From positions 46,817,553 to 46,881,552 of the forward strand of contig NC_092384.1 in assembly GCF_030028105.1 (NCBI RefSeq): 64,000 nt of DNA, given 5' to 3'. Every line of letters begins with the position of its first letter. The first letter of the stretch is position 1. The position numbers were made by a program, and so were the translations under genes. The notes under the pieces are model-generated. The model worked only from the letters and a program-made list of their open reading frames with translations. It ran no database searches and was not told the DNA's origin. Origin of the DNA: Mobula birostris. Lineage: Eukaryota. Of the stretch, positions 12,661 to 56,731 are shown one piece after another.

Positions 12661-15433
12661 ACATAGAAACATAGAAAACCTACAGCACAATACAGGCCCT
12701 TCAGCAAGCCTCTGACTATCCACACGATCAATGCCTCTCATCATCTTATACACCTCTATCAGGTCACCTTTCATCTTCCGCCACTCCAAGAAGTAAAGGC
12801 CAAGTTCACAAAACCTATTCTTATAAGGCATGCTCCCCAATCCAGGCAACGTCTTTGTAAATCTCCTCTGTACCCTTTCTATAGTGTCCACATCCTTCCT
12901 GTAGTGAATTGACCAGAACTGAGCACAGTACTCCAAGTGGGGTCTGACCAGGGTCCTATATAGATGTAACATTACCTCTTGGCTCTTAAACTCAATCCCA
13001 CGATTGATGAAGGCCAATGCACCGTATGCCTTCTTAACCACAGGGTCAACCTGCACGGCAGCTTTGAGTGTCTTATGGACTCGGACCCCAAGATCCCTCT
13101 GATCCTCCACACTGCCAAGAGTCTTACCATTAATACTGTATTCTGTCATCACATTTGACCTACCAAAATGAACCACCTCACACTTATCTGGGTTGAACTC
13201 CATCTGCCACTTCTTAGCCCTGTTTTGCATCCTATCAATGTCCCGCTGTAACCTCTCACAAGCCTCCACACTATCCACAACACCCCTAACCTTTGTGTCA
13301 TCAGCAAATTTACTAACCCATCCCTCCACTTCCTCATCCAGGTCATTTATAAAAATCACGAAGAGTAGGGGTCTCAGAACAGATCCCTGAGGCACACCAT
13401 TGGTGACCGACCTCCATGCAGAATATGACCCGTCTACAACCACTCTTTGCCTTCTGCAAGCAAGCCAATTCTGGATCCACAAAGCAAGGTCCCGTTGGAT
13501 CCCATGCCTCCTTACTTTCTCATAAGCCTTGCATGGGGTACCTTATCAAATGCCTTGCTAAAATCCATATATACTACATCTATTGCTCTACCTTCATCAA
13601 TGTGTTTAGTCACATCCTCAAAAAATTCAGTCAGGCTTGTAAGACACGACCTGCCTTTGACAAAGCCATGTTGACTATTCCTAATCATATTATGCCTCTC
13701 CAAATGTTCATAAATCCTGCCTCTCAGGATTTTTTCCATCAACTTACCAACCACTGAAGTAGGACTCGCTGGTCTCTAATTTCCTGGGCTATCCCTACTC
13801 CCTTTCTTGAATAAAGGAACTACATCTGCAACCCTCCAATCCTCCAGAACCTCTCCCATCCCCATTGATGATGCAAAGATCATTGCCAGCAATCTCCTCC
13901 CTTGCCTCCCACAGTAGCCTGGGTTACATCTCATCTGGTCCCGGAGACTTACCCAACTTGATGCTTTCAAAAATTTCCAGCACATCCTCTTTCTTAATAT
14001 CTATATGCTCAAGCTTTTCGATCTGGTATAAGTCACCCCTACAATCACCAAGATCCTTTTCCGTAGTGAATACTGAAGCAAAGTACTGATTAAGTACCCC
14101 TGCTATCTCCTCCAGTTCCATACACACTTCTCCACTGTCACACTTGATTGGTCCTATTCTCTCATGTCTTCTCCTCTTGCTCTTCACATACTTGTAGAAT
14201 GTCTTGGGGTTTTCTTTAATCCTGTCCATCAAGGCCTTCTCATGACCCCTTCTGGCTCTCCTAATTTCTTGCTTAAGCTCCTTCCTGCTTGCCTTATAAT
14301 ATTCTAGATCTCTATCATTACCTAGTTTTTTGAACCTTTTGTAAGCTCTCCTTTTCTTCTTGACTAGATTTTCAACAGCCTTTGTACACCACGGTTCCTG
14401 TACCCTACCATCCTTTCCGTCTCACTGGAACATACCTATGCAGAACGCCATGCAAATATCTCCTGAATATTTGCCACATTTCTGCCGTACACTTCCCCGA
14501 GAACATCTGTTCCTAATTTATGCTTCCAAGTTCCTGCCTGATAGCTTCATATTTCCCCTTACTCCAATTAAATGCTTTCCTAACTTCTCTGTTCCTATCC
14601 CTCTCCAGTGCTATGGTAAAGGAGATAGAATTGTGATCACTATCTCCAAAATGCTCTCCTGTTGAGAGACCTGACACCTGACCAGGTTCAGTTCCTAATA
14701 CCAGATCAAGTACAGCCTCTCCTCTAGTAGGTTTATCTATATATTGCGTCAGGAATCCTTCCTGAGAACACCTAACAAACTCCACCCCATCCAAACCCCT
14801 CGCTTTAGGGAGATGCCGATCAATATTTGGGAAATTAAAATCTCCCACCAAGACAACCCTGTTATTATTACACCTTCCCAGAATCTGTCTCTCTACCTGC
14901 TCCTCAATGTCCATGTTACTATTGGGTGGTCTATAAAAAACACCCAGTAGAGTTATTGACCCCCTTCCTGTTTCTAGCTTCCACCCACAGAGATTCAGTA
15001 GACAATCCCTCCATGACTTCCTCCTTTTCTGCAGCCATGACACTATCTCTGATCAGCAGTGCCACGCCCTCATGTCTTTTGCCTCCTTCCCTGACCTTTC
15101 TGAAACATCTAAAGCCTGGCACTCTAAGTAACCATTCCTGCCCCTGAGCCATCCAAGTCTCTGTAATGGCCACAACATTATAGTTCCAAGTACTGATTCA
15201 CGCTCTAAGCTCATCCACTTTGTTCATGATGCTTTTTGCATTAAAATAGACAGATCTCAAACCATTGGTCTGAGCACATCCCTTCTCTGTCACCTGCCGA
15301 TCCTCCCTCTCACACTGTCTCCAAGTTTTCTATTATTTGTGAGCCAACAGCCCCTTCCTCCATCTTTTCAGTTCAATTCCCACCCCCTTGAAATTCTAGT
15401 TTAAACTCTCCCCAGTAGCTTTAGCAAACCTCC
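12661..15433 (-). mobile_element. CR1 LINE, long disrupted ORF2 (endonuclease + RT)
   Basis: ITETW, YRPP, GDFNFP, SDHNSI, DFSKAFDKV, GVPQGSVL and KFADDTK motifs; terminal (ttctatgt)n tail at 12661-12678. Confidence 0.93.
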
Positions 15434-42844: not shown

Positions 42845-44188
42845 GAAGAATCAGAATCAGAATCAGGTTTATTATCACTGGCATGTGTCGTGAAATTTGT
42901 TAACTTAGCAGCAGTAGTTTGATGCAATACATAGTATAAAAGAAAAAAATAAATAAATAAATTACAGTATATTGGAGATTAAAAATCGTGCAAAAACAGA
43001 AATAATATATATTGAAAAATTGAGGTATGTTCATGGTTTATTGTTCATTTAGGAATCAAGTGGCAGAGGGGAAGAAGCTGTTCTTGAATCACTGAGTGTG
43101 TGCCTTCAGACTTCAGTATCTCCTACCTGATGGTAACAATGAAAAAAGGGCATGCCCTGGGTGTTGAGAATCCTCAATAATGGACCCTGCTTTTCTGAGA
43201 CACTGCTCCTTGAAGATGTCCTAGGTACTTTGCAGGCTAGTATCCAAGATGGAGCCAACTAAATTTATGACCCTCTGCAGCTTCTTTCGGTCCCGTGCAG
43301 TAGCCCCCTCCCCACCATACCAGACAGTGATGCAGCCTGTCAGAATGTTCTCCAAGGTACATCTATAGAAGTTTTTGAGTGTTTTGTTGATATAACAAAT
43401 ATCTTCAAACTCTAATGAAGTATAGTCACTGTCTTGCCTTCTTATAGCTGCAACTCCAGCTTAGGTCCTCAGAGATCTTGACACCCAGGAACTTGAAACT
43501 GCTCACTCTCTCCACTTCTGATCCCTCTATGAGGATTGGTATGTATTCTTTCATCTTACCCTTCCTGAAGTCCACAATCAGCTCTTTCGTTTTACTGATG
43601 TTGAGTGGAAGGTTGTTGCTGCGACACCACTCCACTAGTTGGTATATCTAGTTCCAATTCGCCCTCTTATCTCCATCTGAGATTCTACCAACAATGGTTG
43701 TATCATCAGCAAATTTATAGATGGTATTTGAGTTGTGCCTAGCCACACAGTCATGGGTATACAGACAGTAGAGCTAAGCACACACCCCTGAAGTGCACCA
43801 GTGTTGATCGTCAGCAAGGAGGAGATATTATCAACAAACTACACAGGTTGTGGTCTTCCGGTTAGGAAGTCAAGGATCCAAATGCAGAGGGAGCTACAGA
43901 GTCCCAGGTTCAATAACTCATCAATCAAGATTGGGGGAATGATGGCGTTAAATGTTGTGCTATAGTCGATGACATAGGTGTTTGTATTGTTCAGGTAGTC
44001 TAAGGCTGTGTGAAGAGCCATTGGATTGCATCTGCTGTTGACCTATTGTGGTGATAGGCAAATTGCAGTGGGCCCAGGTCCTTGATGAGGCAGGAGTTCA
44101 GTCATGACCAACCTCTCAAAGCATTTCATCACTATAGATGTGAGTGCTACTGGGCGACAGTCATTAAGGCAGCTCACATTCTTCTTCT
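42845..44188 (-). mobile_element. Rex1/Babar LINE, 5'-truncated
   Basis: [25 protein letters not shown] and EWCRSNNL motifs; (ttctga)n tail. Same family as 27580-28816. Confidence 0.88.
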
Positions 44189-44604
44189 AATCATTCTAAC
44201 CATTCCCTCCTACATATTCCTCCATTTATTTATCATCCATATGCCCATCTAAGGGTCTGCCAAAATCCATAATGTATCTGCTGCCGTGGCCACAACCACC
44301 ACTCCTGATAGGGTGTTTGATGTGCCCACCACTCTTTGTGCAAAGAACTTACCTCTGACATCCCTCCTATACCTTCCTCCAATCACCTTAAAGTTATACC
44401 TCCCTGCATTAACCATTTCTGTCCTGGGAAAAAGAGCTCTTATCAACTTGTATACCTCAATCAAGTCACCTCACATCCTCTATTGCTCCAAACAGAAAAG
44501 CCCAAGCTCACTTAACCTATCATAACAAGACATGCCCTCTAGTCCAGGCTGCATCCTGTTACATCTCCTCCTTACCCTTTCTAAAACTTCCACATCCTTC
44601 CTAT

Positions 44605-47600
44605 TGTAAAGGGATTTCGACTTTTATGTTACTGCGGAGGCTAATTAAAATGGCCTCTTTGTTATGTTAATCTGGGGAATGTGGCTTTGTTGTGTTAAAC
44701 ACTGAGAAAGTTTGCGCTAGCAGCTTGTTTTGGTTTAGACTGTGATAAGAAAAATGTTATTAACCAATGGGGATAGTTGTTATGTTTTTGGTGTATTGAA
44801 GATACTGTATGTGCGGGGTTTTGGGGGAGAAGGCGGGAGAGCGAGACAGAGGATGGACGAGGTGCTGTGAGGTCCGCTAACGGGGTCGGACCCCGAGAGG
44901 GGCATTCGGCGAGGAGCGGAGACGGAGACGGACTCGTGTGGAGCGTCTGGTCGATCACCGTTGTTGGTCCCAGGCGGCCAGTCGAGGTGGTCCGAGGGGT
45001 CGCAGGTTGAAGAAGGTGGTCCTTGAGCTCCAACTGTTTTGTGCACGAAATGATTGAACTTTGACAAGTGTGGCACCTTTTTTTTTCCTTTTATATTTTA
45101 TTCTTTCTTAATTATATAGTTCCAGTAATATCTATAAACTGTAAATCATTTAATTGCATCTGGTGTATTGTCTGTTATTTGGGCGGGGTGGGGTACCTCA
45201 CACAGCATCCACACAAACTAATTACTCAGTTTGGCGGGGCCAAGGCTGTTTCCCTAGACGACAGCGAGCCGAGCGACCCTGAGGGTGGCCGGGGGGGGGG
45301 GGGGCACATTGTGTGGGCTTTGTCCGGGATTGAGTCTGCTGGTATGCTGTGTGGGTGCCCTGTTTAAATCTGTAATGTGTGTCTCTGTGGGTTATTTGCT
45401 GGTGATTGCTGTATGCGTGGTGGGTGAGGTCTTTGTTCCAGTTCAGACTAGCATTGATGGGTTGGAGGTGGCACTCGGGGCTGTCCATGCGGTTGGGTGA
45501 GAGGGGAAAGAGTGGTCTGATTTGGAGGTAGGGTCTGCGAATGCTCTGGCAGGCTCCGCCTGGCACTTGGGATAGTGTCCACCCCAAGAGAGGCGGAGGC
45601 ATGTGAGACGTGGGCGGAGCAGATCTTGCAGTTGTTAGATGAGTGGCAGTGCTCGGTTGAGGGAAGAGCAACAGGGATTGGTTGAAAGTTTGAGTAGGCG
45701 GGCTGGTGACAGTGTTAGAGCTGTCAGGTTCACCTACACCGTAGTGACAGCTGTTAGTTATTTGAAAGAGGGGGGAAAGTTTTCAGTGTGTCTTCTCTGG
45801 CTAGGAGGGCGGCTAAATTGCTTGCAGTGCCAGGGGGATCAGCCCCTCCTTCAGTTGTTCAGCTGAGCAGAGAAGTGTCGGGAAACTTAGTGGAGGTCCA
45901 GTGAGGGGAACGGCTTGGGGTCTCTGGGGAAGCTCGTTCCCAGCAACGTACCGATGAACTTCCGAAAGGAAAAGACCCTATTCCTGAAGGCCTAGAGGGG
46001 CCACGCCCCAGGGTGTCACTATGGATAGAGGGAAGCGATGCTAAAGCTATCCTCGACCCCGGGGCACAGATCAAGCTGTTGTACAGTTCGTTTTACAACC
46101 GGTGTCTGAAGCATTTATCCTTGACAACCACAAGGGCAACGGAGACTTTGGGTATTAGTGGCAGTAGTTATCCAGAAGACGATGATTGGTTAATGACCCT
46201 GGAGTTCATGGGGGCATTGTCTGGGCACCCAGTGTGTCGAGTTGCTTCTGAGGACGTGTGTAGCAGCCTTGAGCCAGTACCGAATTTAAACGACACCCGG
46301 CGGTGGTACGGCTTGGGGAAAGTAGCTGAGGGTGAGACCCTCTTAGTAGATGCTCCGAACTACCACGAGGGAGGGTAGTTGACCGCTGAAGACACCTCAG
46401 TGAGAGAGAGGTCGTGGCAACTGGACCCTAGCGGCGTGGAAGATGAAGGCAGTGTGTGTGTGGATTATGTGATGTGGTTTAATGTGCTGCATCTGAGGAG
46501 TGGATGTTGCCAGATCCTGAGGAGTGCGGCTGTTGAGCTGAAGATGGCCGTTACTAGTTCCCCAGGATTCTTCCGATCCGAAAAGATGCCCAAGGGCATA
46601 TCCGGAGCCCCTGCATCCTTCCCGCGGATCATGAGGAAGACCACGGGGGAAGAGAAGGTGTGTGGAGTTTTGACGTATGTGGATGACCGCCTAGAGCTTG
46701 AATTCACCTGGGGGGACTATGAGGCGAGGCGAGTGGTTGAGCCCGGGCGACCGAAGTGAAGTGTCAAATGTGGAGGGGTTTTTGGCCGAAGGAGTTTGGT
46801 GCAATGTGAGAAAAATGACCCGACATACCAGTTGAACTTCCTGGTGTTGGGAAGAGACGGTGGCGGACCGGGGGATGGAAACCCAGGTCGTCAATCTAAA
46901 TGAGACACAGGGAAGTGAGGGGATTTGCACCACACTGCGGTCATGTACTGATGAATTAATCCAGCGAGAAGAAACAATGACCCACCTTCGAAGGGGTCAG
47001 CAGAAACTCAAGACGTCCATTCAGAACAGATTGGAAGACTTACAAGTTGGGGAAGATCAAGGAAGTGTTCTGACTAAGGTCAACAGAAAACCGAGAGCCC
47101 AGGGAGGGGAGTTTGACTACACTCCCGAGGAGGTGAAGAAATGGAGGACAGATCTCAGAAAAGGGAGGCGGACGCTTGAAAGGAACCTGAAGGTGACTAT
47201 CGGGAGTTTAAATGGTGGAAAAGCTGAAAGTCGACCTGGAAGACGTCCTCAGGAAGAAACAACCAGAGGCTGAACATTCTTTAACTGCTGCTTTTCAGGT
47301 CAGGATGGAAGAAGCTGGTGGGGTAACTGCATCCCAGATTGAGATGGCCAGGAACCCTTAGTCAGAACTGCTGAGGCTGTGGCAAGAGTTGAAGGAGTCC
47401 CCAAAGAAACTGACGTCTCAACTGCAGGAGGCTGAAGGGGTAGCCCCGGCTAAATGTTTCAGTTTGGAGAAACTCAAACAGCAGCTACCGATCGAAGGAA
47501 TGAGAAACGATAGGGACTCGAAGGATGATGTGCTGCACATGTGGTGGTGATTGAGGAAGAGACCTTTGGCCCTTCTCCCACTGAGTCAGGTGTAGTGGGG

Positions 47601-48654
47601 AGGGCTAGCTGTGGGCAGACTGAGTTACAGCAGGATCAGGAAGGAGGAGAGGCGGGGCCCCGAACACGGAACAGGGGGCTCCGAGCTGTAGTGGTGGCCT
47701 GAGTGAGAGAGGAGTTGGCAAGCAGGCCCGAGGTATCCCTAGTAGTGTCTGAGCCTTTTGGGTTTAGGTGAGGGGGTACAGAGGTCTCAGAGGGTTAAGA
47801 AGCTCCCAGATAGGTTGGCCTATGTAGTGCCCATGGGACGGGAGTAAGGTCCACTGTTTGGGGAGCACTGTCACCGTGTGTTGTGTGTCTGCAGCACTGG
47901 TTGGCTAGTTATTTAGAAGTCATGAGGACATGACTTTATTTGGTGGGGGGGGAAGAGTGTAAGGGGTTTCGACTTTTATGTTACTGCGGAGGCTAATTAA
48001 AATGGCCTCTTTGTTATGTTAATCTGGGGAATGCGGCTTTGTTGTGTTAAACGCTGAGAAAGTTTGCGCTAGCAGCTTGTTTTGGTTTAGACTGTGATAA
48101 GAAATATGTTATTAACCAATGGGGATAGTTGTTATGTTTTTGGTGTATTTGAAGATACTGTATGCGCGGGGTTTTGAGGGAGAAGGCGGGAGAGCGAAAC
48201 AGAGGATGGACGAGGTGCTGTGAGGTCCGCTAATGGGGTCGGACCCTGAGAGGGGCATTCGGCGAGGAGAGGAGACGGAGACGGACTCGTGTGGAGCGTC
48301 TGGTCGACCACCGTTGTTGGTCCCAGGCGGCCAGTCGAGGTGGTCCGAGGGGTCGCAGGGTGAAGAAGAAGGTCCTTAGGCTCCAACTGTTTTGTGCACG
48401 AAGAGATTGAACTTTGATAAGTGTGGCGCCTTTTATTTTCCTTTTATATTTTATTCTCTCTTAATTATATAGTTCCAGTAATATCTATAAACTGTAAATC
48501 ATTTAATTGCATCTGGTGTATTGTCTGTTATTTGGGCGGGGTGGGCTACCTCACACAGCATCCACTCAAACTAATTACCCAGTTTGGTGGGGCCGAGGCT
48601 GTTCCCTAGACGACAGCGAGCTGAGCGACCCTGAGGGTGGCCAGGGGGGCTACA
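44605..48654 (+). mobile_element. Non-autonomous Ty3/Gypsy LTR retrotransposon with both LTRs
   Basis: LTRs 44605-45308 and 47958-48654 (TG...CA); 4-bp TSD CTAT; tRNA-Pro-like PBS (tgtgggctttgtccgggat) at ~45312; PPT before 47958. Degenerate protease (AILDPGAQ) and RT (MPKGISGAPASF, TYVDD). Confidence 0.93.
46935..47496 (+). pseudogene. Captured intronless fragments of sarcomeric myosin heavy-chain rod (possibly MYH16-like) inside the Gypsy element
   Basis: Four segments in myosin order: LEDLQVGEDQGSVLTK..KKWRTDLRKGRRTLERNLKVT, VEKLKVDLEDVLRKK, RMEEAGGVTASQIEM, KKLTSQLQEAE..AKCFSLEKLKQQL. Confidence 0.85.
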
Positions 48655-49311
48655 CTATAATGAGGTGACCAGAACTGAAGACAATACTCTAAGTGTTGTT
48701 TTACCAGGGTTTTATAGAACTGTAACATTACGTTGTGGCTCTTGAACTAAATCCCTTGATTAATGAAGGCCAACATCTTTTTAACCACCCTATCAACTTG
48801 CACAGCAACTTTGAGGAATCTTTGGGCATGGACCCCAAGTTCCCTCTGTTCATCATACTGCTAATAATCTAATCATTGACAATGTATTCTGCCTTAAAAT
48901 TCAACCTTCGAGATTGAAGCACTTTACACTCTTCCAGGTTGAACTGCATCTGCCATTTCCCAGCCTAGCTCTGCATTCTGTCAATGTCCCAGTGCAATCT
49001 GCAGAAACCCACCACACTATCCACGATTTCACCAATCTTTATATCACCTGCAAACTTACTAACCCAGCCTGCCACTTCCTCATCCAAGTCATTTATAAAA
49101 TTCCCTGAGCAGGGGTCTTGGAACAGAAACCCCCAAAACATCACTGATCACCTCCAGACTGAATACTCTCCATTTACTACCACTCTCTGCCTTCTATCCT
49201 AATTGCTGGAATAGGGAGATTGTCCTCTCAAGAGAGGGTAAACAACTTGGATTTACATTCAATGGCATTTACAAAAACAAGGGGTGACGCTAATCATAGA
49301 TATATGGATCA

Positions 49312-50849: not shown

Positions 50850-53225
50850 GCCTGTCACACAGGTGGTTCACATTCACTGATATGGGCAATGGATTCTGGT
50901 CAGTACCATTGGCACCTGAATGCCAATCACAGTTGGCTTTTACAATTGATGATCAACAATATCAGAAGACGAGGCTACCACAAGGACTACACAACATTCC
51001 CACTGTCTCTCACATGGTTCTGAGATCTTCCAGACCTTGATTCGACTATCATACAAATGTGAATGATATCCCGATTGCATCCGATGCTGCAGACAGCATG
51101 AATATGAGGTGCTTTATTTGCTCAATTATCTGTTCTCTGAGAATCACAAAGCAAATCTAGATAAGGCACAACTACAACAAGAAGAAGTAATTTACTTGGG
51201 ACAAAAAACTTAATGGCAAAAGCCATTAAGTCAGCAAAACCTCCCACAATAGTTCAGCAACTCCAGTCATTTCTGAGTTTGTGGAATGACAACAGAGCAT
51301 TCATCCACTCATATGCTGAAATTGCTCAGCCAATCAATTATCTGCATTCAAGACAACCATGTCACTTTTGATGAAGAACAGCTGAAAGCATTTCAAACTT
51401 TAAAAGCAGCATTGCATCCTGCATCTGCATTAGGAATCCATAATGCAGGTAAATCATTCACTGTGTATGTCAATGAGGAAAACATGATAGCAGTTTTAAC
51501 TCAAGGACATGGAGATGAACAGTGTCCTGTTGGCTATCACTCTGCTAAAGGCATGATTCTATATATCGCTGGCTCCTCAATGATTGAAATAGGAATCTGA
51601 ATGGCTGGATGAGCAGTTGTTTATGAAACTGAAGTGCTGGCAGGAAGCACGGCTACTGGTACCTCTGTGCAGCAGGCAAAACTTAAAGCTTTGATTGAAG
51701 CCTGTAAGTTAGCAGAAGGAAGATCAGCTAATATCTACACTGATTCTTGATACCTTTTTTGAATTGTTCATGATTATGCAAACTTATGGGGACAAAGATG
51801 ATTTCTTACTGCAGTAGGAATCCCAGTCAAGAATGGCCAACTAATACAAGAAGTTATGGATGTCATACAACTGCCATGAGAAGATGCTATATTAAAATGA
51901 AAAAGCCACTCCAAAATGACTACAATGGAAAACCGTGGAAATGCATTTGTGGACAAAACTGCAAAAACAGCAGCACAGCAAGAAATAAAGGAAATAAAAG
52001 AATTATCAAGAATGTATGTAGTGAATCCAAGAACTGGTATTATGGAAACAAAGTTGAACTCTGTATCACAGATGAACATACTGGATATCTGGGAATTGAA
52101 AGCTCAATGCTCCAGACAGAAAAAGTGGTTCTGGATGGAGAATGGTGGTAAGTTAAATAGTGATGGAGTATAGATACTTGTCACGGACTAGTAGCTCCAA
52201 CTGAGCTGCTTCTTTACTGGGCACAGCAAATACACTCCCAAGGTCATACTGGAGTGCAAAAGATGATTGACAGATTCTCCCCATGGTGATGGAATCCAAA
52301 GTTCAGGGCACAAGCTCAACAAATGTTTGAAAGATGCATGACATGCCAGAAAACAAATTCTGGAGTAGTGGAAAAGCTATCACAATTAGGTGCTCCTGCC
52401 CCACCTGGTCCATTTGTACATTTACAAGTAAACTACATCCCTTTCACCAAGGTGTCAAAAATACTCAGACATACTGCTAATAGTGGACCAGTATGAGGTG
52501 GGTGGAAGCTAATCCAGCAAGGAAAGCCAATACCACACAAAAGGCAAAAACTCTGATCAAGGACTATATTCATAGATGGGACTCTGACCAAGGAACACAT
52601 TTCACTGGGAGTGTGTGTCAGGAATTATGTCAATTGATGAATATTGAGAGGACTTTTCATTGTCCACATCGCCTAGACCAAGATTCCCAACCTTATTTTA
52701 TGCCATGAACCAATGCCACTAAGCAAGGGGTCCATGGACACCAGGTTGGGAATCCCTGTTCTAGAGTCATCAGAATAAGTTGAGCGAATGAATGGAATCA
52801 TGAAGCAATGATTGACAAGTGTCATGAAGAAGGCATACCATGGCCTACAGCTCTTCCTATGCTCTTACGTAACATCAGAGCAAACCCAAACAAGGAAACT
52901 AAACTACAGTAAGTCCATTTGACGTGATAACAGGGGACCCTTGATCCCAGAGAGGCTGATGTTTATGGCAGACAGTTTAATTGACTATTGTGTGAAAGTA
53001 GCTCAAGCAGTACAGTCTGCTTCTCAACAGATTTCTGCTGCTTGGAGTGATCCAACAGATGAGCGACACACTATTTCCTGCCAAATAGGTCCCAGTTATG
53101 AAACTGCAAAGGGACCACTAAAAGCTGGACGGGAAGGTCCTTATCGAGTGCTGTTAATTATCAACTCACAGTGAAAGTAGAAGGTAAGTGGGTACACGCA
53201 AGTCACTGGAAGCATACTAAGTGTT
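50850..53225 (+). pseudogene. pol: Endogenous retrovirus pol remnant (RT, RNase H, integrase)
   Basis: RT: WFTFTDMGNGFWSVPL..LAFT..RLPQGLHN. RNase H: SVQQAKLKALIEAC..ANIYTDS. Integrase: HSQGH..CMTC, DSDQGTHFTG, VERMNG, EGPYRVLL. Confidence 0.9.
52679..52758. mobile_element. hAT MITE (same family as 11835-11916, opposite orientation) inside the ERV integrase
   Basis: TIR-like ends caagattcccaacc / ggttgggaatccctg; imperfect TSD gcctagac/ttctagag. Removing it rejoins HCPHR..ESS..VERMNG. Confidence 0.75.
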
Positions 53226-53381
53226 ACCAGACAAAGACAACAAGTGCAATGGTGCATGTAATAGCAACCTTTCTTAGTCACAGTGTATACTCTTCTTGGG
53301 CTACAGTAAGCAAATCACTAAGCAACCGTAAGACTTCAAGCAAGTTAATAGCTAATGGACATTATGATGTTTATTGTGATA

Positions 53382-53453
53382 GTCGTCGTCGTCGTCTTCT
53401 TCTTGTTTTACTATGGCAGTCGGCACCCAACTTAATGGTGCGTTACCGCCACG
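53382..53453 (-). mobile_element. Extreme 3' end of an I/Nimb-like LINE
   Basis: 10-bp TSD tattgtgata; gtggcggtaacgcacc..ggtgccgactgcc stem-loop followed by a (gaa/gac)n tail. Confidence 0.6.
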
Positions 53454-54472
53454 TATTGTGATATTACTTGCTGTTGTTTTTATCCTAGTTTCCCTATCCA
53501 TAATGTGCCAGTTGAGATGACTCATGATGTATACTTGCCAATATCACATGAATTTGCTGATGCAGTTAATGACTCCAACTGCTGGGTATGTCAATATATA
53601 CCACACACTTCAAAATATTCACTAATGCTAGGCACCCCTACAGATTCAGAACATGCACTCTCTTTATTAAGTATTCCAGGAATGGTGATGCAGACATTAT
53701 GCCTGTGATTTATTATTCTCAAGGGAGACCTAAATATATAATGATCATGCCACCCACATACCATCATAAACTGGATCATTTATGTAAATATAATTTAGGG
53801 AATATCATACCTGACCCTATTCATGTTCTATCCTGGGATACATCTTCTAATGTTCATGACAAAGCTATTACGTCCTTTCGTGTGTTTACAGTAAACGCTA
53901 CCTTATGCCTGAGTGCATAAGGTACCATTCCTGTAGGGTATAGTTTATACAATTACATTATCCTAAATGGGTAATGATTCTGGAATTTTAGTGACAATCA
54001 GAAAAATATTACAATCCAACAGAACTCTCATAAAGGCGTAAGAAATGGTCTAAGTTCATGGAACAGTATGTACTTTATGTGTGGAAATGGAGCCTCCACC
54101 TCTCTTACACTTAATTGTTTAGGATCTTTTTATTTAGGGTAAGTTTTTCCTGCCGTGAGACATATGCTCACCTTACCTTTACCGAGCCCCCTCACCCACC
54201 TCCCAAATTTAAAAGTAAACAAGATAGTTCAGAAGGAGGTAGTTTTGTATCAATTCTGTTCACATTTTATGGTGTTGCAAGAAGTATGAGAGGTAAGCAA
54301 TGAGAAGCCTTGGGAAAAGTAACAAAAGAAATTGTTGCCATGTGCTAAGATGGTTCCTCAAAATCATATGGCTTTAGATCTTTTCATAGCAGTTAAGGGA
54401 GGAGCGTGCTGAAATGTGGCAAGAAATGTTGTACTTACGTACCAGACAAATCTGAAAACATAATTAATTTGG

Positions 54473-54830
54473 AAAAGATCGGTCGACGTTTCGGGCCGGA
54501 ACCCTTCATCAGGACTGTGGAGGGAAGGGGCAGAGGCCCTATAAAGAAGGTGGGGGGGAGGGTGGGAAGGAGAAGGCTGGTCAGTTCCAGGTGAAAAACC
54601 AGTAAGGGGAAAGATAAAGGGGTGGGGGAGGGGAAGCAGGGAGGTGATAGGCAGGAAAGGTGAAGAAAGAATACGGGAAAACACAATGGGTAGTAGAAGG
54701 AGGCGGAACCAAAAGGGAGGTGGTAGGCAGCTGGGGGAGGGGGCAGAGTGACATAGGGATAGGGGAAGGGAGGGGGAGGAGTTGTGCTGTGAGTGTTGCT
54801 TTGACAGCATCTGCAGATTATTTTGTGCTT
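54473..54830. mobile_element. Penelope-type end insertion: long inverted 5' part plus forward tail
   Basis: 16-bp TSD aacataattaatttgg (54457-54472, 54831-54846). Confidence 0.85.
54480..54517 (-). ncRNA. Minimal (short stem III) type I hammerhead ribozyme motif
   Basis: Minus strand CAGUC-CUGAUGA-AGGGUUCCGGCCC-GAAACGUC-GACCG: intact catalytic core, stem II GGG/CCC, stem I with one mismatch. Confidence 0.75.
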
Positions 54831-54881
54831 AACATAATTAATTTGGCTGATCATATTTGTAAAGCAGTTAAAATACATCAT

Positions 54882-55180
54882 TTCCCATTGTGTTTTCCCC
54901 TATTCCTTCTTTACCTTTCTTGCCTATCACCTCTCTGCTTCCCCTCCCCCACCCCTGTATCTTTCCCCTTACTGGTTTTTCACCTGAAACTTACCAGCCT
55001 TCTCCTTCCCACCCTCCCCCCACCTTCTTTATAGGGCCTCTGCCCCTTCCCCTTTCAGTCCTGATGAAGAGTTCCGGCCCAAAGCGTTGACTGATCGTTT
55101 CCACGGATGCTGCCCGACCTGCTGAGTTCCTCCAGCGTGTTGTGAGTGTTGCTTTGACCCAGCATCTGCATTGTGTTTAC
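54882..55180 (+). mobile_element. Second Penelope-type end of the same family, with mutated hammerhead
   Basis: cagtcctgatgaagagttccggcccaaagcgttgactg; inverted relative to 54473-54690. Confidence 0.82.
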
Positions 55181-55218
55181 AATCTCATAGAAGGGATTTC
55201 TTTGATTGGATTCATTCA

Positions 55219-56000
55219 AGTGAGGTATTGCACTTTGGAAGGACAAACCAAGGTAGAACATACAAGGTAAATGGTAGGGCACTGAGGAGTGCAGTAGAAC
55301 AGAGGGTTCTGGGAATAAAGATACAAAGTTTCCTAAAAGTGGCGTCACAGGAAGATAGGGTCATAAACAGAGCTTTTGGTACATTTGGCCTTTATAAATC
55401 AAAGTATTGATTTTAAGAGTTGGAATGTTATAGTGAGGTTGTATAAGGCATTGGTGAGGCCGAATTTGGAGTATTGTGTGTAGTTTTGGTCACCAAATTA
55501 CAGGAAGGATATTAATAAGGTTGAAAGAGTGTAGAGAAGGTTTACAAGGATGTTGCCGGGACTTGAGAAACTGAGTTACAGAGAAAGGTTGAATATGTTA
55601 GGACTTTATTCTCTGGAGCATAGAAGAATGAGGGGAGATTTGATAGTATATAAAATTATGATGGGTATAGATAGAGTGAATGCAAGCAGGTTTTTTCCAC
55701 TGAGGCTAGGGGAGAAAAAGACCAGAGTACATGGGTTAAGGGTGAAGGGGGAAAAGTTTAAAGGGAACATTGGAGTGGGGGGGGCGCTTCTTCACACAGA
55801 GTGGTGGGAGTGTGGAATCAGCTGCCAGATGAAGTGGTAAATGCGGGCTCACTTTTAATATTTAAGAAAAACTTGGACAGGTACATGGATGAGAGGTGTA
55901 TGGAGGGATATGGTCCAGGTGCAGGTCAGTGGGACTAGGCAGAAAAATGGTTCGGCACAGCCAGAAGGCCTGTTGCTGTGCTGTAATGTTCTATGGTTCT
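55219..56000 (+). mobile_element. CR1 3' fragment inside env
   Basis: EVLHFGRTNQ and MLPGLEKLSYRERL; tail ttctatggttct. Confidence 0.9.
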
Positions 56001-56323
56001 AAGTCTTGGAAGCTGGGGTTACTCAATATTCAGAATCATATTATTCATACTAATATGCCTTATCATAATTTATCTTTTTTAACTTGCTTAAAGCCAATCA
56101 TTAACAGAATAGTTCAAACTCTTGTAAGTGTAGTACCTACAAATCTGCCTAACTATGACGTGATCTTATGAATACTTTGAGGAATATATACATATATACC
56201 CTCTGATATTTTGTCACCTAAGTAGTTGTTGATTATTTTACACATTTTACCAAAAGTTTCTCTGCCCCTGGATTTTCAGATGTAATGAATCTAAACATGT
56301 GCTTTAGAATCAAAGGGGGGACT

Positions 56324-56731
56324 TGTTGGATTTGACTATTTAATTACCTGCTTGTATTTTAAGCAGCCTTTACATGCATGGCAGATTAATATGCCCCTGG
56401 TGGCTATACAAAGTATAATTCTGGACATTTCTTAGCTTCTCTGTACCCAAAGAGTATTCCTCATTGGCTGATTTTATACCAACATTTTCTAATTGGAATA
56501 TCCTTGTCTATGAAATTTTCCTATTTTTAGATTTTTAAAAAAGTAGCTGTATTATGTCAGGTGCCATCTCTTTCTTCCAGCTTCCCTTCTTCAAGTAGAA
56601 GACTTCCGTCCCTGTTTGTTTCATCTTCCTTTTGTTCTATCAATTCTTAATAAAGCTATCAAGAAGCAACAAGTTTATGCCTTGACCCTGACTTCTAAAA
56701 CAACCTTGGATTTCAACACCAAAATCCAACA
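56324..56731 (+). repeat. ERV 3' LTR (~408 bp)
   Basis: Preceded by PPT aaagggggga; 10-bp terminal inverted repeats TGTTGGATTT / AAATCCAACA; AATAAA at ~56649. Confidence 0.8.

What the first reader, a model, noticed from the sequence alone, without database searches (positions are those of the whole stretch)
46935..47496. Gypsy LTR retrotransposon carrying captured, spliced myosin heavy-chain rod sequence
Seen: between the RT remnant and the 3' end of a TSD-flanked, two-LTR element are four peptide blocks. LEDLQVGEDQGSVLTKVNRKPRAQGGEFDYTPEEVKKWRTDLRKGRRTLERNLKVT aligns without gaps to recalled sarcomeric myosin [56 protein letters not shown] (23/56 identical by hand count). After a frameshift come VEKLKVDLEDVLRKK, then RMEEAGGVTASQIEM (cf. 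RLEEAGGATSAQIEM), then KKLTSQLQEAE..AKCFSLEKLKQQL (cf. KKLAQRLQDAE..AKCASLEKTKQRL). The blocks are in myosin order, separated by deletions. Known: this rod region spans several exons in vertebrate MYH genes. Inference: a myosin mRNA was captured by template switching during reverse transcription and is carried as cargo by a non-autonomous family. The KVTIGSLN..KVDLEDV wording is closest to what I recall of MYH16. I am not aware of a description of such an element in cartilaginous fish.
Basis: partly seen in the sequence, partly recalled or inferred. Interest (0 to 1): 0.9.

Follow-up and report, generated by a model that had tools for sequence, protein, structure and literature searches.

The report
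Ray retrotransposon carrying captured myosin fragment
This is a dead copy of a jumping gene from manta and stingray genomes that long ago swapped the back half of its own enzyme gene for an intron-free piece of a muscle myosin gene and then spread; it is a known kind of event whose copies are often mislabelled as myosin genes.

Summary
Window 44605-48654 is a 4,050-bp element with two LTRs (95.5% alike), TG..CA ends and a 4-bp target duplication. It sits in another repeat whose uninterrupted paralogue lies at 12735-13145. Downstream of a protease-like stretch and a truncated RT, 46820-47490 holds collinear, decayed pieces of a sarcomeric myosin rod (MYH7 numbering about 932-1105, 1149-1181, 1390-1424).

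Piece 1 alone hits only myosins (E 3e-6). A profile of the family gives MYH7 E 1e-14 and Ty3 RT E 7e-9.

The cargo is not a one-off. Nineteen RefSeq proteins of Mobula birostris, M. hypostoma, Hypanus sabinus and Hemitrygon akajei carry it; those long enough show the same RT-myosin, inner-deletion or myosin-tail junctions. Eight are named as myosins. Thousands of contig pieces from three organisms cover the element.

The DNA runs unbroken across at least two intron positions of MYH genes, so the source was spliced RNA. In a tree the copies form one clade. Its sister is a Narcine gene model that NCBI names MYH16. No bona fide MYH16 was tested.

Capture by template switching is inferred, not shown.

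This scan had already found the family on other DNA of this genome (17 notes). It is a new member of a known kind, LTR-mediated retroposition.

The parts
44601..44604 (+). left target-site duplication (CTAT)
   Evidence: Read. The same four letters follow the 3' LTR. The paralogous uninterrupted site lies at window about 12899-12908.
44605..45308 (+). 5' LTR (704 bp, TG...CA)
   Evidence: 95.5% identity to the 3' LTR (29 mismatches and 2 gaps in 690 columns).
45309..46012 (+). leader / remnant upstream of the protease; a primer-binding-site-like stretch lies just after the LTR; no gag found
   Evidence: One search shows no long ORF here. Pfam finds nothing in 45639-45863. The PBS assignment is by position only and was not tested against a tRNA.
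46013..46378 (+). protease-like stretch (motif ILDPGAQ at 46049-46069), ending in a stop at 46376-46378
   Evidence: No Pfam hit. Collinear with the N-terminal parts of paralogues P0015 and P0020.
46379..46819 (+). truncated Ty3/Gypsy-type RT remnant (YVDD at 46676-46687; last RT motif KCGGVF at 46766-46783); stop at 46757-46759
   Evidence: Pfam RVT_1 reaches only E 0.087 on the window piece. Paralogue P0020 matches Ty3 RT at E 2.1e-13. Family profile matches Ty3 at 7.2e-9. P0015 aligns at 88% identity over 219 aa.
46820..47301 (+). myosin block 1, MYH7 numbering about 932-1105; frameshifts near 46853 and 47213
   Evidence: The real-MYH fragment P0010 aligns to 46872-47210 (E 6.5e-10).
47302..47400 (+). 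myosin block 2, MYH7 about 1149-1181; stop at 47359-47361
   Evidence: weak alone. domain 5 and (the family aligns through MYH7 1140-1180). Coordinates.
47401..47490 (+). myosin block 3, MYH7 about 1390-1424
   Evidence: (E 2.5e-9 for P0009 against the MYH7 1361-1425 chimera).
47491..47941 (+). element tail of unknown origin, shared by other copies (VIEEETFGPSPTESG at 47547-47591)
   Evidence: Aligned with the C-terminal parts of P0007, P0008, P0011 and P0016, and seen in P0019 and P0022. No Pfam hit. No usable Atlas hit.
47942..47957 (+). polypurine tract directly before the 3' LTR
   Evidence: Read.
47958..48654 (+). 3' LTR (697 bp, TG...CA)
48655..48658 (+). right target-site duplication (CTAT)

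Best explanation
Window 44605-48654 is a dead copy (three stops, at least two frameshifts) of a non-autonomous Ty3/Gypsy-type LTR retrotransposon family of myliobatiform rays.

In the family's founder, everything after the last RT motif (RNase H, integrase) was replaced by an intron-free fragment of a sarcomeric myosin heavy-chain mRNA. The fragment is in sense orientation and, in intact paralogues, in frame with the RT.

The most likely mechanism (inferred) is that of LTR-mediated retroposition. Inside a virus-like particle, the RT switched from element RNA to a co-packaged spliced myosin mRNA and then back to the element's 3' region. That would give a chimeric cDNA with both LTRs, primer site and polypurine tract.

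Such a chimera can be transcribed and copied in trans by autonomous relatives. It spread to many chromosomes in at least four ray species and split into subfamilies through further inner deletions and one duplication, at least one of them between short repeats.

This copy inserted into another repeat, made a 4-bp target duplication, and has since decayed. Its LTRs differ at 29 of 690 positions plus 2 gaps.

Shown: the element's anatomy, the myosin homology, the lack of introns, the shared junctions, the many copies, and the single origin of the cargo.

Inferred: template switching, trans-mobilisation, and neutrality of the cargo.
For: Anatomy: LTR pair, TG..CA ends, CTAT duplication, polypurine tract, and an uninterrupted paralogue of the host repeat at 12735-13145.

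Myosin homology. Profile A4 against the PDB gave 14 sequences at E<=1e-3: 12 myosins (best 1.2e-14) and 2 Ty3 entries. In the whole 64-kb window, myosin-like matches occur only at 46872-47445, so the window is not an MYH locus.

Gypsy type: Ty3 RT at E 2.1e-13 for paralogue P0020, with no retroviral RT among 7 hits at E<=1.

No introns: passages of PMC3546296 place a MYH7 intron at c.2923 (codon 974|975), exon 23 at codons 927/932, and exon 25 at codon 1056. The window is gapless over 975-1066 and P0010 aligns across 46934|46935. Narcine isoforms P0023/P0024 differ by one 29-residue block that maps to window 47025-47111.

Family census: of 27 proteins at E<=1e-3 among 8000 scored, 18 are ray copies, plus P0013 from a cluster. 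They lie on records of 5, 5 and 6 different lengths in M. hypostoma, M. birostris and H. sabinus.

Shared junctions: RT and myosin sit in one protein in P0003, P0005, P0007, P0009 and P0014, P0015, P0020. The 1181|1390 junction is present in 15 of the 19 proteins and in the window. Two proteins (P0019, P0020) have a larger deletion over it and two (P0004, P0005) end before it.

Contigs: 27,146, 29,024, 2,088 and 1,869 pieces at >=85% likeness in four runs of three organisms, with all 30 bins covered. At the 8 listed places in 46854-47409, 1-40 distinct contigs per run differ from the window.

Deletion variant: a contig joint 47033->47308 with 5 shared letters equals the deletion seen in P0007/P0009.

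Tree: 16 family rows form one clade (100/99), sister to Narcine P0023 (100/99).

Signs of decay: protein identity to paralogue P0015 is 88% in the RT part and 91-92% in the myosin part. P+G+C+W make up 7-13% of the family rows against 1.7-3.3% in clean MYH fragments.

The mechanism as described in print: abstract and passages of PMC5131818.
Against: - No autonomous parent element and no donor mRNA were in hand. So microsimilarity at the two capture junctions, the hallmark of template switching, could not be tested.
- The tail 47491-47941 has no recognisable origin. That it is the element's own 3' end rests only on its presence in other copies.
- The window's own RT remnant is barely recognisable (Pfam E 0.087). 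Typing as Gypsy leans on paralogues.
- The intron argument uses human MYH7 and RefSeq isoform models as proxies.
- Only this one copy was checked for LTRs and a target duplication. The other copies are known only as proteins and short contigs.
- Contig pieces give no copy number (one search says so).
- Annotated proteins are biased towards open frames.
- Pfam does not call the myosin tail in any family member tested: 0 of 4 (P0006, P0014, P0015, P0016).
Confidence: 0.85

Rival explanations
1. The myosin piece first became an ordinary LINE-made processed pseudogene. It landed inside a Gypsy element, or a Gypsy element recombined with it, and the chimera then spread.
For: LINE-type RT remnants lie right next to the element (ORFs at 43839-44177 on the minus strand), so LINE machinery exists in this genome. 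The capture junctions were not examined at the DNA level.
Against: The cargo is an inner part of the coding region (about codons 932-1424 of about 1935), without 3' UTR or A-run. None is visible at 47490-47560. It replaces RNase H and integrase rather than interrupting them. PMC5131818 reports exactly this for LTR-mediated retrocopies (passages). Old poly(A) tails can decay, so this is not excluded.
Confidence: 0.07
2. The copies arose by DNA-level duplication (segmental duplication, gene conversion) of one chimeric locus, not by retrotransposition of a cargo-carrying element.
For: Only this copy was checked for LTRs and target duplication. The other copies are known here only from proteins and short contigs.
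Against: This copy has its own 4-bp target duplication and sits in a repeat with an uninterrupted paralogue. The annotated copies lie on 5-6 different chromosome-sized records per species. Contig variants cover LTR, RT, myosin and tail alike in three organisms.
Confidence: 0.03
3. The myosin-derived open frame is kept by selection. It could serve as an oligomerising part of a PR-RT-myosin fusion that helps the element's spread, or as a source of RNAs acting on the donor myosin gene. It would then not be neutral cargo.
For: Several copies keep long open frames through RT and myosin (P0015 432 aa, P0020 403 aa, P0016 355 aa). The cargo is in sense orientation and in frame. The family is old and successful. 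One run guessed to be RNA holds contigs over the whole element (X9).
Against: This copy has three stops and at least two frameshifts. RT remnant and myosin part have diverged about equally from paralogue P0015 (88% against 91-92%). Helix-breaking and odd residues are three to seven times as frequent as in clean myosin fragments. Subfamilies have lost different parts of the cargo. Annotation favours open frames. The RNA status of X9 is a guess by the tool.
Confidence: 0.05

Closest known systems
LTR-mediated retrocopies / 'pseudo-LTR retrotransposons' of animals (Tan et al. 2016, PMC5131818; abstract and passages read)
   Same: A partial host mRNA copy lies inside an LTR element and replaces part of its inner ORF. 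Both LTRs are kept, orientation is sense, frames can be in phase, there is no poly(A), and further rounds of retroposition follow.
   Different: Those cases are young and mostly single or few-copy (fly, mosquito, zebrafish, chicken, mouse, human). Here the chimera became an old, multi-copy family shared by several ray genera and split into subfamilies. Microsimilarity at the fusion points was not testable here.
Maize Bs1 and rice LTR elements carrying cellular gene fragments (cited in passages of PMC5131818; not read themselves)
   Same: A non-autonomous LTR retrotransposon carries host gene fragments as cargo and spreads with them.
   Different: Those hosts are plants, and Bs1 carries pieces of three genes. 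Here there is one animal gene, a muscle myosin rod, with several inner deletions.
HERV-K with captured FAM8A1 in human (cited in passages of PMC5131818; not read itself)
   Same: A vertebrate LTR element holds a processed host gene copy.
   Different: That is a single locus, not an amplified family.
Acutely transforming retroviruses carrying cellular genes (own knowledge; PMC5131818 passages mention retroviral capture of host mRNA)
   Same: Replication genes are replaced by spliced host sequence through recombination during reverse transcription. The product is defective and depends on a helper.
   Different: Those are infectious viruses with selected, active cargo. Here the element is an endogenous Ty3/Gypsy type with decaying, apparently neutral cargo.
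Sarcomeric myosin heavy chain rod (MYH7/MYH4 structures; Narcine bancroftii model that NCBI names MYH16)
   Same: Collinear homology to rod codons about 932-1424. The nearest relative in the tree is the Narcine model.
   Different: About 30-35% identity to MYH7/MYH4-type fragments and 40-68% to the Narcine model. Large inner deletions, many helix-breaking residues, and no Pfam Myosin_tail_1 call.

Membership tests
Ty3/Gypsy (Metaviridae-type) LTR retrotransposon | Two direct LTRs with TG...CA ends, flanked by a short target-site duplication | tested here: met
   LTRs at 44605-45308 and 47958-48654 are 95.5% alike. CTAT lies on both sides. An uninterrupted paralogue of the host repeat is in the window.
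Ty3/Gypsy (Metaviridae-type) LTR retrotransposon | RT of the Ty3/Gypsy lineage | tested here: met
   Paralogue P0020 matches Ty3 RT 4ol8 at E 2.1e-13 and Ty3 Gag-Pol 7q5b at 1.2e-12. The next hit is a plant-virus-type polyprotein at 0.0025, and there is no retroviral RT at E<=1. The family profile gives 7.2e-9. The window's own remnant reaches only Pfam RVT_1 E 0.087. No RT tree was built.
Ty3/Gypsy (Metaviridae-type) LTR retrotransposon | Domain order PR-RT-RNase H-integrase, and a gag | tested here: not met
   A protease-like stretch and a truncated RT are present. No RNase H, integrase or gag was found. This fits a non-autonomous derivative, not an autonomous member.
Ty3/Gypsy (Metaviridae-type) LTR retrotransposon | Primer-binding site after the 5' LTR and polypurine tract before the 3' LTR | tested here: inconclusive
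   A polypurine tract at 47942-47957 is clear. A PBS-like stretch follows the 5' LTR, but no tRNA was compared.
LTR-mediated retrocopy (template-switch capture) | Host gene fragment inside the element, replacing part of its inner ORF, with both LTRs kept | tested here: met
LTR-mediated retrocopy (template-switch capture) | Cargo lacks the introns of the parental gene | tested here: met
   Tested indirectly. The DNA is continuous across the MYH7 intron place at codon 974|975, across at least one more intron before codon 1056 (PMC3546296 passages), and across both ends of the block that Narcine isoforms P0023/P0024 skip. The rays' own donor locus was not seen.
LTR-mediated retrocopy (template-switch capture) | Microsimilarity between element and mRNA at the fusion points | not testable with these tools
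Short repeats were seen only at a later inner deletion (47033->47308, 5 shared letters).
LTR-mediated retrocopy (template-switch capture) | Secondary retroposition of the chimera | tested here: met
   Nineteen annotated copies in four species on many chromosome-sized records. Thousands of contig pieces in three organisms. This copy has its own target duplication.
Sarcomeric myosin heavy chain rod | Specific, collinear sequence homology to the rod | tested here: met
   (best E 1.2e-14); tree.
Sarcomeric myosin heavy chain rod | Pfam Myosin_tail_1 above its cut-off | tested here: not met
   No hit at E<=10 in the three window pieces. None in P0006, P0014, P0015 or P0016 at E<=0.01. The cargo is derived from the rod but is too decayed to be a member.
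MYH16 as the donor paralogue | Groups with bona fide MYH16 to the exclusion of other MYH genes | tested here: inconclusive
   The family is sister to a Narcine model that NCBI names MYH16, then to the unnamed fragment P0010, and lies apart from MYH7/MYH4/cod fragments. Five of the 19 copies carry MYH16-type names. No verified MYH16 sequence was available, and the length limit of the protein search kept full-length myosins out.

The most novel reading that the evidence does not exclude
The myosin cargo may not be mere baggage. One version: the in-frame PR-RT-myosin fusion kept open in some copies helps this non-autonomous family to be packaged or copied. Another version: RNA from hundreds of sense copies acted on the donor MYH16-like gene and contributed to its decay in batoid rays. 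The only non-element relative found, the Narcine model, itself looks degraded (8% P+G+C+W, Pfam below cut-off).
Probability: 0.06. Interest if true: 0.7.

Novelty: new member of a known kind. Interest (0 to 1): 0.35.

Why it matters
This is a clear vertebrate case in which a host-gene-carrying LTR element did not stay a single locus. It became an old, multi-copy family shared by manta/devil rays and stingrays. That shows how far LTR-mediated retroposition can go in animals.

It also has a practical side. At least 8 of 19 RefSeq proteins made from its copies are named as myosins (MYH16, cardiac, skeletal, striated). One SDHAF3 isoform model carries the cargo as its C-terminus. Myosin gene counts and orthology tables for rays are therefore polluted.

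The shared inner junctions give ready-made markers for dating subfamilies in batoid phylogeny.

Tried and rejected
**Searches that gave little or nothing**
- Pfam on the three myosin pieces, the protease-like ORF, an upstream ORF and the tail gave nothing except RVT_1 at E 0.087.
- Pfam on four family proteins (P0006, P0014, P0015, P0016) found no Myosin_tail_1. P0020 gave RVT_1 below its cut-off, and the Narcine model P0023 gave Myosin_tail_1 below its cut-off.
- The representatives search did not reach full-length myosins at E<=1e-3. One of its 12 hits, P0002 (E 7.5e-22, 15 stretches), is a tandem-repeat protein of the ctenophore Pleurobrachia bachei. I reject it as a repeat artefact.
- The protein Atlas gave no usable hit for the tail. 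The idea of an integrase tail, from an earlier first-reader note, therefore stays untested rather than refuted.
- The search with Narcine P0023 gave only 6 hits, none named MYH16 outside Narcine. The donor paralogue stays open.

**Tests that could not be completed**
- Codon positions: read laying prints only 40 of 490 differing places, 8 of them in the myosin part. That is too few for a test of codon positions, so I dropped it.
- Expression: no listed run is on record as RNA. X9 is only guessed to be RNA. No claim is made.
- Shared insertion: whether this very insertion is shared by organisms A and B could not be told, because contigs end at the repeat border.

**Literature**
- The first search for MYH7 exon borders found nothing useful. 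The second found PMC3546296.
- Three searches found no paper on a myosin-carrying element in rays. They cover only the held library. Supplements were closed, so Supplemental Table 8 of PMC5131818, which lists vertebrate cases, was not seen.

**Rows left out of the tree**
- P0007, P0009, P0020 and P0022 lack most of block 1.
- P0024 is an isoform of P0023.
- P0031 and P0034 were left out as well.
- P0002, P0025, P0028 and P0029 are not myosin.
Full report
**1. What is in the sequence**

Their coordinates were fixed:
- LRSCTDELIQ at 46935
- NRLEDLQ at 47025
- VEKLKVDLEDV at 47215
- RMEEAGG at 47302
- PKKLTSQLQEAE at 47401
- AKCFSLEKLKQQL from 47449

The window has no N and 40% G+C.

**2. Is it myosin?**

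I searched the Protein Data Bank with each piece.
- Piece 1 (46860-47270) gave 13 sequences at E<=10. The best 11 are all myosin heavy chains, with vertebrate MYH7/MYH4 at 3.2e-6 to 2.4e-5. The alignment to full-length MYH7 975-1066 has no gaps.
- Piece 3 (47362-47547) has MYH chains as its best 8 of 24 hits, at 1380-1422 (8.8e-4 to 0.11).
- Piece 2 alone is not significant (0.55), but it points to 1145-1165.

Order and spacing are those of the rod. Pfam sees nothing in the pieces.

A profile of ten family proteins (A4) raises the MYH7 match to 1.2e-14. Its RT-derived columns pick up Ty3 RT at 7.2e-9. In all, 14 sequences reached E<=1e-3: 12 myosins and 2 Ty3 entries.

In the whole 64-kb window, tblastn with six real or model myosin fragments finds matches only at 46872-47445. 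So this is not a myosin locus.

**3. The element**

A self-comparison shows one direct repeat pair, 44609-45297 and 47961-48649, 95.5% alike (29 mismatches and 2 gaps in 690 columns).

Read at the base level, the LTRs are 44605-45308 and 47958-48654. Both run from TG to CA. CTAT lies on both sides (44601-04 and 48655-58), and a polypurine run lies at 47942-57.

The two flanks together match one continuous stretch elsewhere in the window (12735-12908 and 12899-13145, about 74%). The element therefore sits as a discrete insertion in another repeat.

Inside the element lie, in order:
- a leader without ORFs;
- a protease-like stretch (46013-46378);
- an RT remnant with YVDD at 46676 and a last RT motif at 46766-46783;
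- the myosin-derived 46820-47490;
- a 450-bp tail.

No gag, RNase H or integrase was found.

The copy is broken by stops at 46376-78, 46757-59 and 47359-61, and by frame changes near 46853 and 47213. Places 46376 and 46757 are among those where nearly all other contigs differ from the window. Paralogues read through all of them.

**4. Type of element**

The window's own RT remnant is weak (Pfam RVT_1 E 0.087). Paralogue P0020, which aligns to window 46208-46771, matches Ty3 RT at 2.1e-13 and Ty3 Gag-Pol at 1.2e-12. No retroviral RT is among its 7 hits at E<=1. I therefore file the element as a non-autonomous derivative of a Ty3/Gypsy-type element. No RT tree was built.

**5. Is the cargo propagated?**

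- The word-index search with piece 1 found one protein, P0001 of Mobula birostris. It is 94% identical and reads the three blocks as one open frame.
- The exhaustive representative search gave 12 hits at E<=1e-3: nine ray proteins, two real myosin fragments and one ctenophore repeat artefact.
- The profile search gave 27 at E<=1e-3 among 8000 scored: 18 ray copies, 2 Narcine isoforms, 3 RT-only proteins and 4 real myosin fragments.

With P0013 from a cluster, that makes 19 copies: 7 in M. hypostoma, 5 in M. birostris, 6 in Hypanus sabinus and 1 in Hemitrygon akajei. They lie on records of 5, 5 and 6 different lengths in the first three species.

Eight of the 19 carry myosin names. One is an SDHAF3 isoform model, and ten are 'uncharacterized'.

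The alignment and the sequences show three shared features:
- The RT remnant is fused to the cargo in seven proteins (P0003, P0005, P0007, P0009, P0014, P0015, P0020).
- The same tail follows the cargo in P0007, P0008, P0011, P0016, P0019 and P0022.
- The junction between rod positions about 1181 and 1390 is present in 15 of the 19 and in the window. Two of the 19 have a larger deletion over it, and two end before it.

Laying contigs of four runs from three coded organisms on 44300-49000 at >=85% likeness gave 27,146, 29,024, 2,088 and 1,869 pieces, with all 30 bins covered. At the listed places, the number of distinct contigs per run that differ from the window is:
- 1-40 in the myosin part;
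- 1-80 in the RT part;
- 7-58 in the tail.

These are contigs, so they show many variants, not a copy number.

A flank contig of run X1 (44368-44603) is identical to the window and stops at the insertion border.

**6. Spliced origin**

Passages of PMC3546296 list the following for human MYH7:
- c.2923-18 in intron 23, so an exon starts at codon 975;
- Glu927 and Met932 in exon 23;
- Glu1056 (c.3168) in exon 25;
- c.3337-3dup, so an exon starts at codon 1113.

Hence at least two introns fall between codons 932 and 1056.

Two bird MYH7 partial models in hand (P0012, P0027) break into unrelated sequence exactly before codon 975 and after codon 1112. This agrees with the paper.

In the window, codon 975 corresponds to 46935. 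The real-myosin fragment P0010 aligns from 46872 to 47210 across that point. The stretch 975-1066 is gapless.

The Narcine isoforms P0023 and P0024 differ by one 29-residue block. By my alignment, that block equals rod codons 1005-1033 and window 47025-47111. The window DNA is continuous at both ends of it.

The two Narcine isoforms also part company right after the residue that aligns with MYH7 codon 1112. This suggests that the model has real introns at canonical places.

So the cargo lacks introns where myosin genes have them. This rests on proxies, because the rays' own donor locus could not be fetched.

**7. Donor and single origin**

By BLASTP, 15 of 19 family proteins score best against the Narcine model (40-68% identity). 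Against MYH7/MYH4-type fragments they reach 25-37%. The other four lack most of block 1.

The maximum-likelihood tree had 24 rows and 183 columns, and was rooted on two marine metatranscriptome myosin fragments.
- All 16 family rows, the window included, form one clade (100/99).
- The Narcine model is its sister (100/99).
- Next comes the unnamed fragment P0010 (98/95).
- MYH7, MYH4 and cod fragments lie apart.

This fits one capture from a paralogue of the lineage that NCBI names MYH16 in Narcine. No verified MYH16 was in the set, so the name is not tested.

The window belongs to a Mobula-only subfamily (6 rows, 100/100). A second Mobula subfamily groups with the stingray copies (92/95, not starred). 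This hints that subfamilies predate the split of the two groups.

**8. Later history**

Subfamilies differ by inner deletions and by one 40-residue duplication (P0016, P0017).

One deletion is documented three ways:
- Proteins P0007 and P0009 jump from the first block straight to the second.
- One contig of X1 joins 47033 to 47308 with 5 shared letters.
- The window itself has the same short repeat at both places.

The junction 1181|1390 lies between two rod sites that both read LEEA in MYH7 (alignments). With MYH7 as proxy, this is a hint of homology-guided switching.

**9. Is the cargo used?**

Identity to the open paralogue P0015 is 88% over the RT part and 91-92% over the myosin parts. P, G, C and W make up 7-13% of family rows against 1.7-3.3% of clean myosin fragments. 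Different subfamilies lost different parts. This looks neutral. Without DNA of other copies, no dN/dS could be computed.

**10. Mechanism and rivals**

The anatomy matches what PMC5131818 (abstract and passages) describes as LTR-mediated retroposition:
- a partial mRNA copy replaces part of the inner ORF;
- both LTRs are kept;
- there is no poly(A);
- the chimera behaves as a pseudo-LTR retrotransposon that can be copied again.

I take template switching in a virus-like particle as the most likely origin (inferred).

A LINE-made pseudogene nested in the founder cannot be excluded without the fusion points. DNA-level duplication is unlikely, given the copy's own target duplication and the spread over chromosomes.

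**11. Novelty**

This scan had already noted the same family on other DNA of this genome. There are 17 notes with 'myosin', four of them followed up with the same reading. I re-derived the main points independently.

I added:
- the Narcine model as nearest non-element relative, with its exon marks;
- the tree;
- the documented short-repeat deletion;
- the SDHAF3 chimera.

Three literature searches found no description of such an element in rays. Supplements were closed.

The kind is known. The member, its age and its spread are new, of modest interest, and useful as an annotation warning.

An age in years is not given. Converting the 4.2% LTR mismatch would need a substitution rate for rays that no call provided.

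Noticed in passing
protein P0022 (Hypanus sabinus, named SDHAF3 isoform X1): This gene model joins about 57 residues of a real SDHAF3 N-terminus (Pfam PF13233/PF05347 on record) to about 120 residues of the family's myosin blocks 2-3 and tail. It is either an exonised copy or an annotation chimera.
   Followed up: partly
proteins P0023/P0024 (Narcine bancroftii): This short, degraded-looking myosin model (Pfam Myosin_tail_1 E 2.4e-4, below cut-off; 8% P+G+C+W) is the nearest relative of the cargo. It may be a decaying MYH16-like gene of an electric ray, or an older form of the cargo. Its locus could not be fetched.
   Followed up: partly
window 12735-13145 and flanks 44437-44603 / 48659-48891: The element sits in another dispersed repeat, about 74% like a second copy in the window. 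Hundreds of loose contig ends at 44350-44397 and 48655-48696 show that this repeat is itself high-copy.
   Followed up: partly
window 43839-44177, minus strand: ORFs here have the look of a LINE-type reverse transcriptase (for example the stretch [17 protein letters not shown]) just left of the element. The LINE reading is from my own knowledge and was not tested.
   Followed up: no
window 50850-56731: An earlier first-reader note of this scan calls this a decayed class I endogenous retrovirus with gamma-type Env. I did not look at it. It shares no sequence with the element studied.
   Followed up: no
protein P0002 (Pleurobrachia bachei, 1761 aa): A ctenophore tandem-repeat protein scored E 7.5e-22 against piece 1 through 15 repeats of one 22-residue match. 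This is a reminder that summed repeat hits can look significant.
   Followed up: yes
proteins P0012 and P0027 (bird MYH7 partial models): Both public models run into non-myosin sequence exactly at canonical exon ends (before codon 975, after codon 1112), apparently by reading into introns. This was handy here as independent marks of intron places.
   Followed up: partly
proteins P0016 and P0017 (Mobula birostris): These copies hold a second, diverged copy of the first 40 or so cargo residues in tandem. The window's subfamily form has only one, so a duplication or a deletion between repeats took place within the cargo.
   Followed up: no
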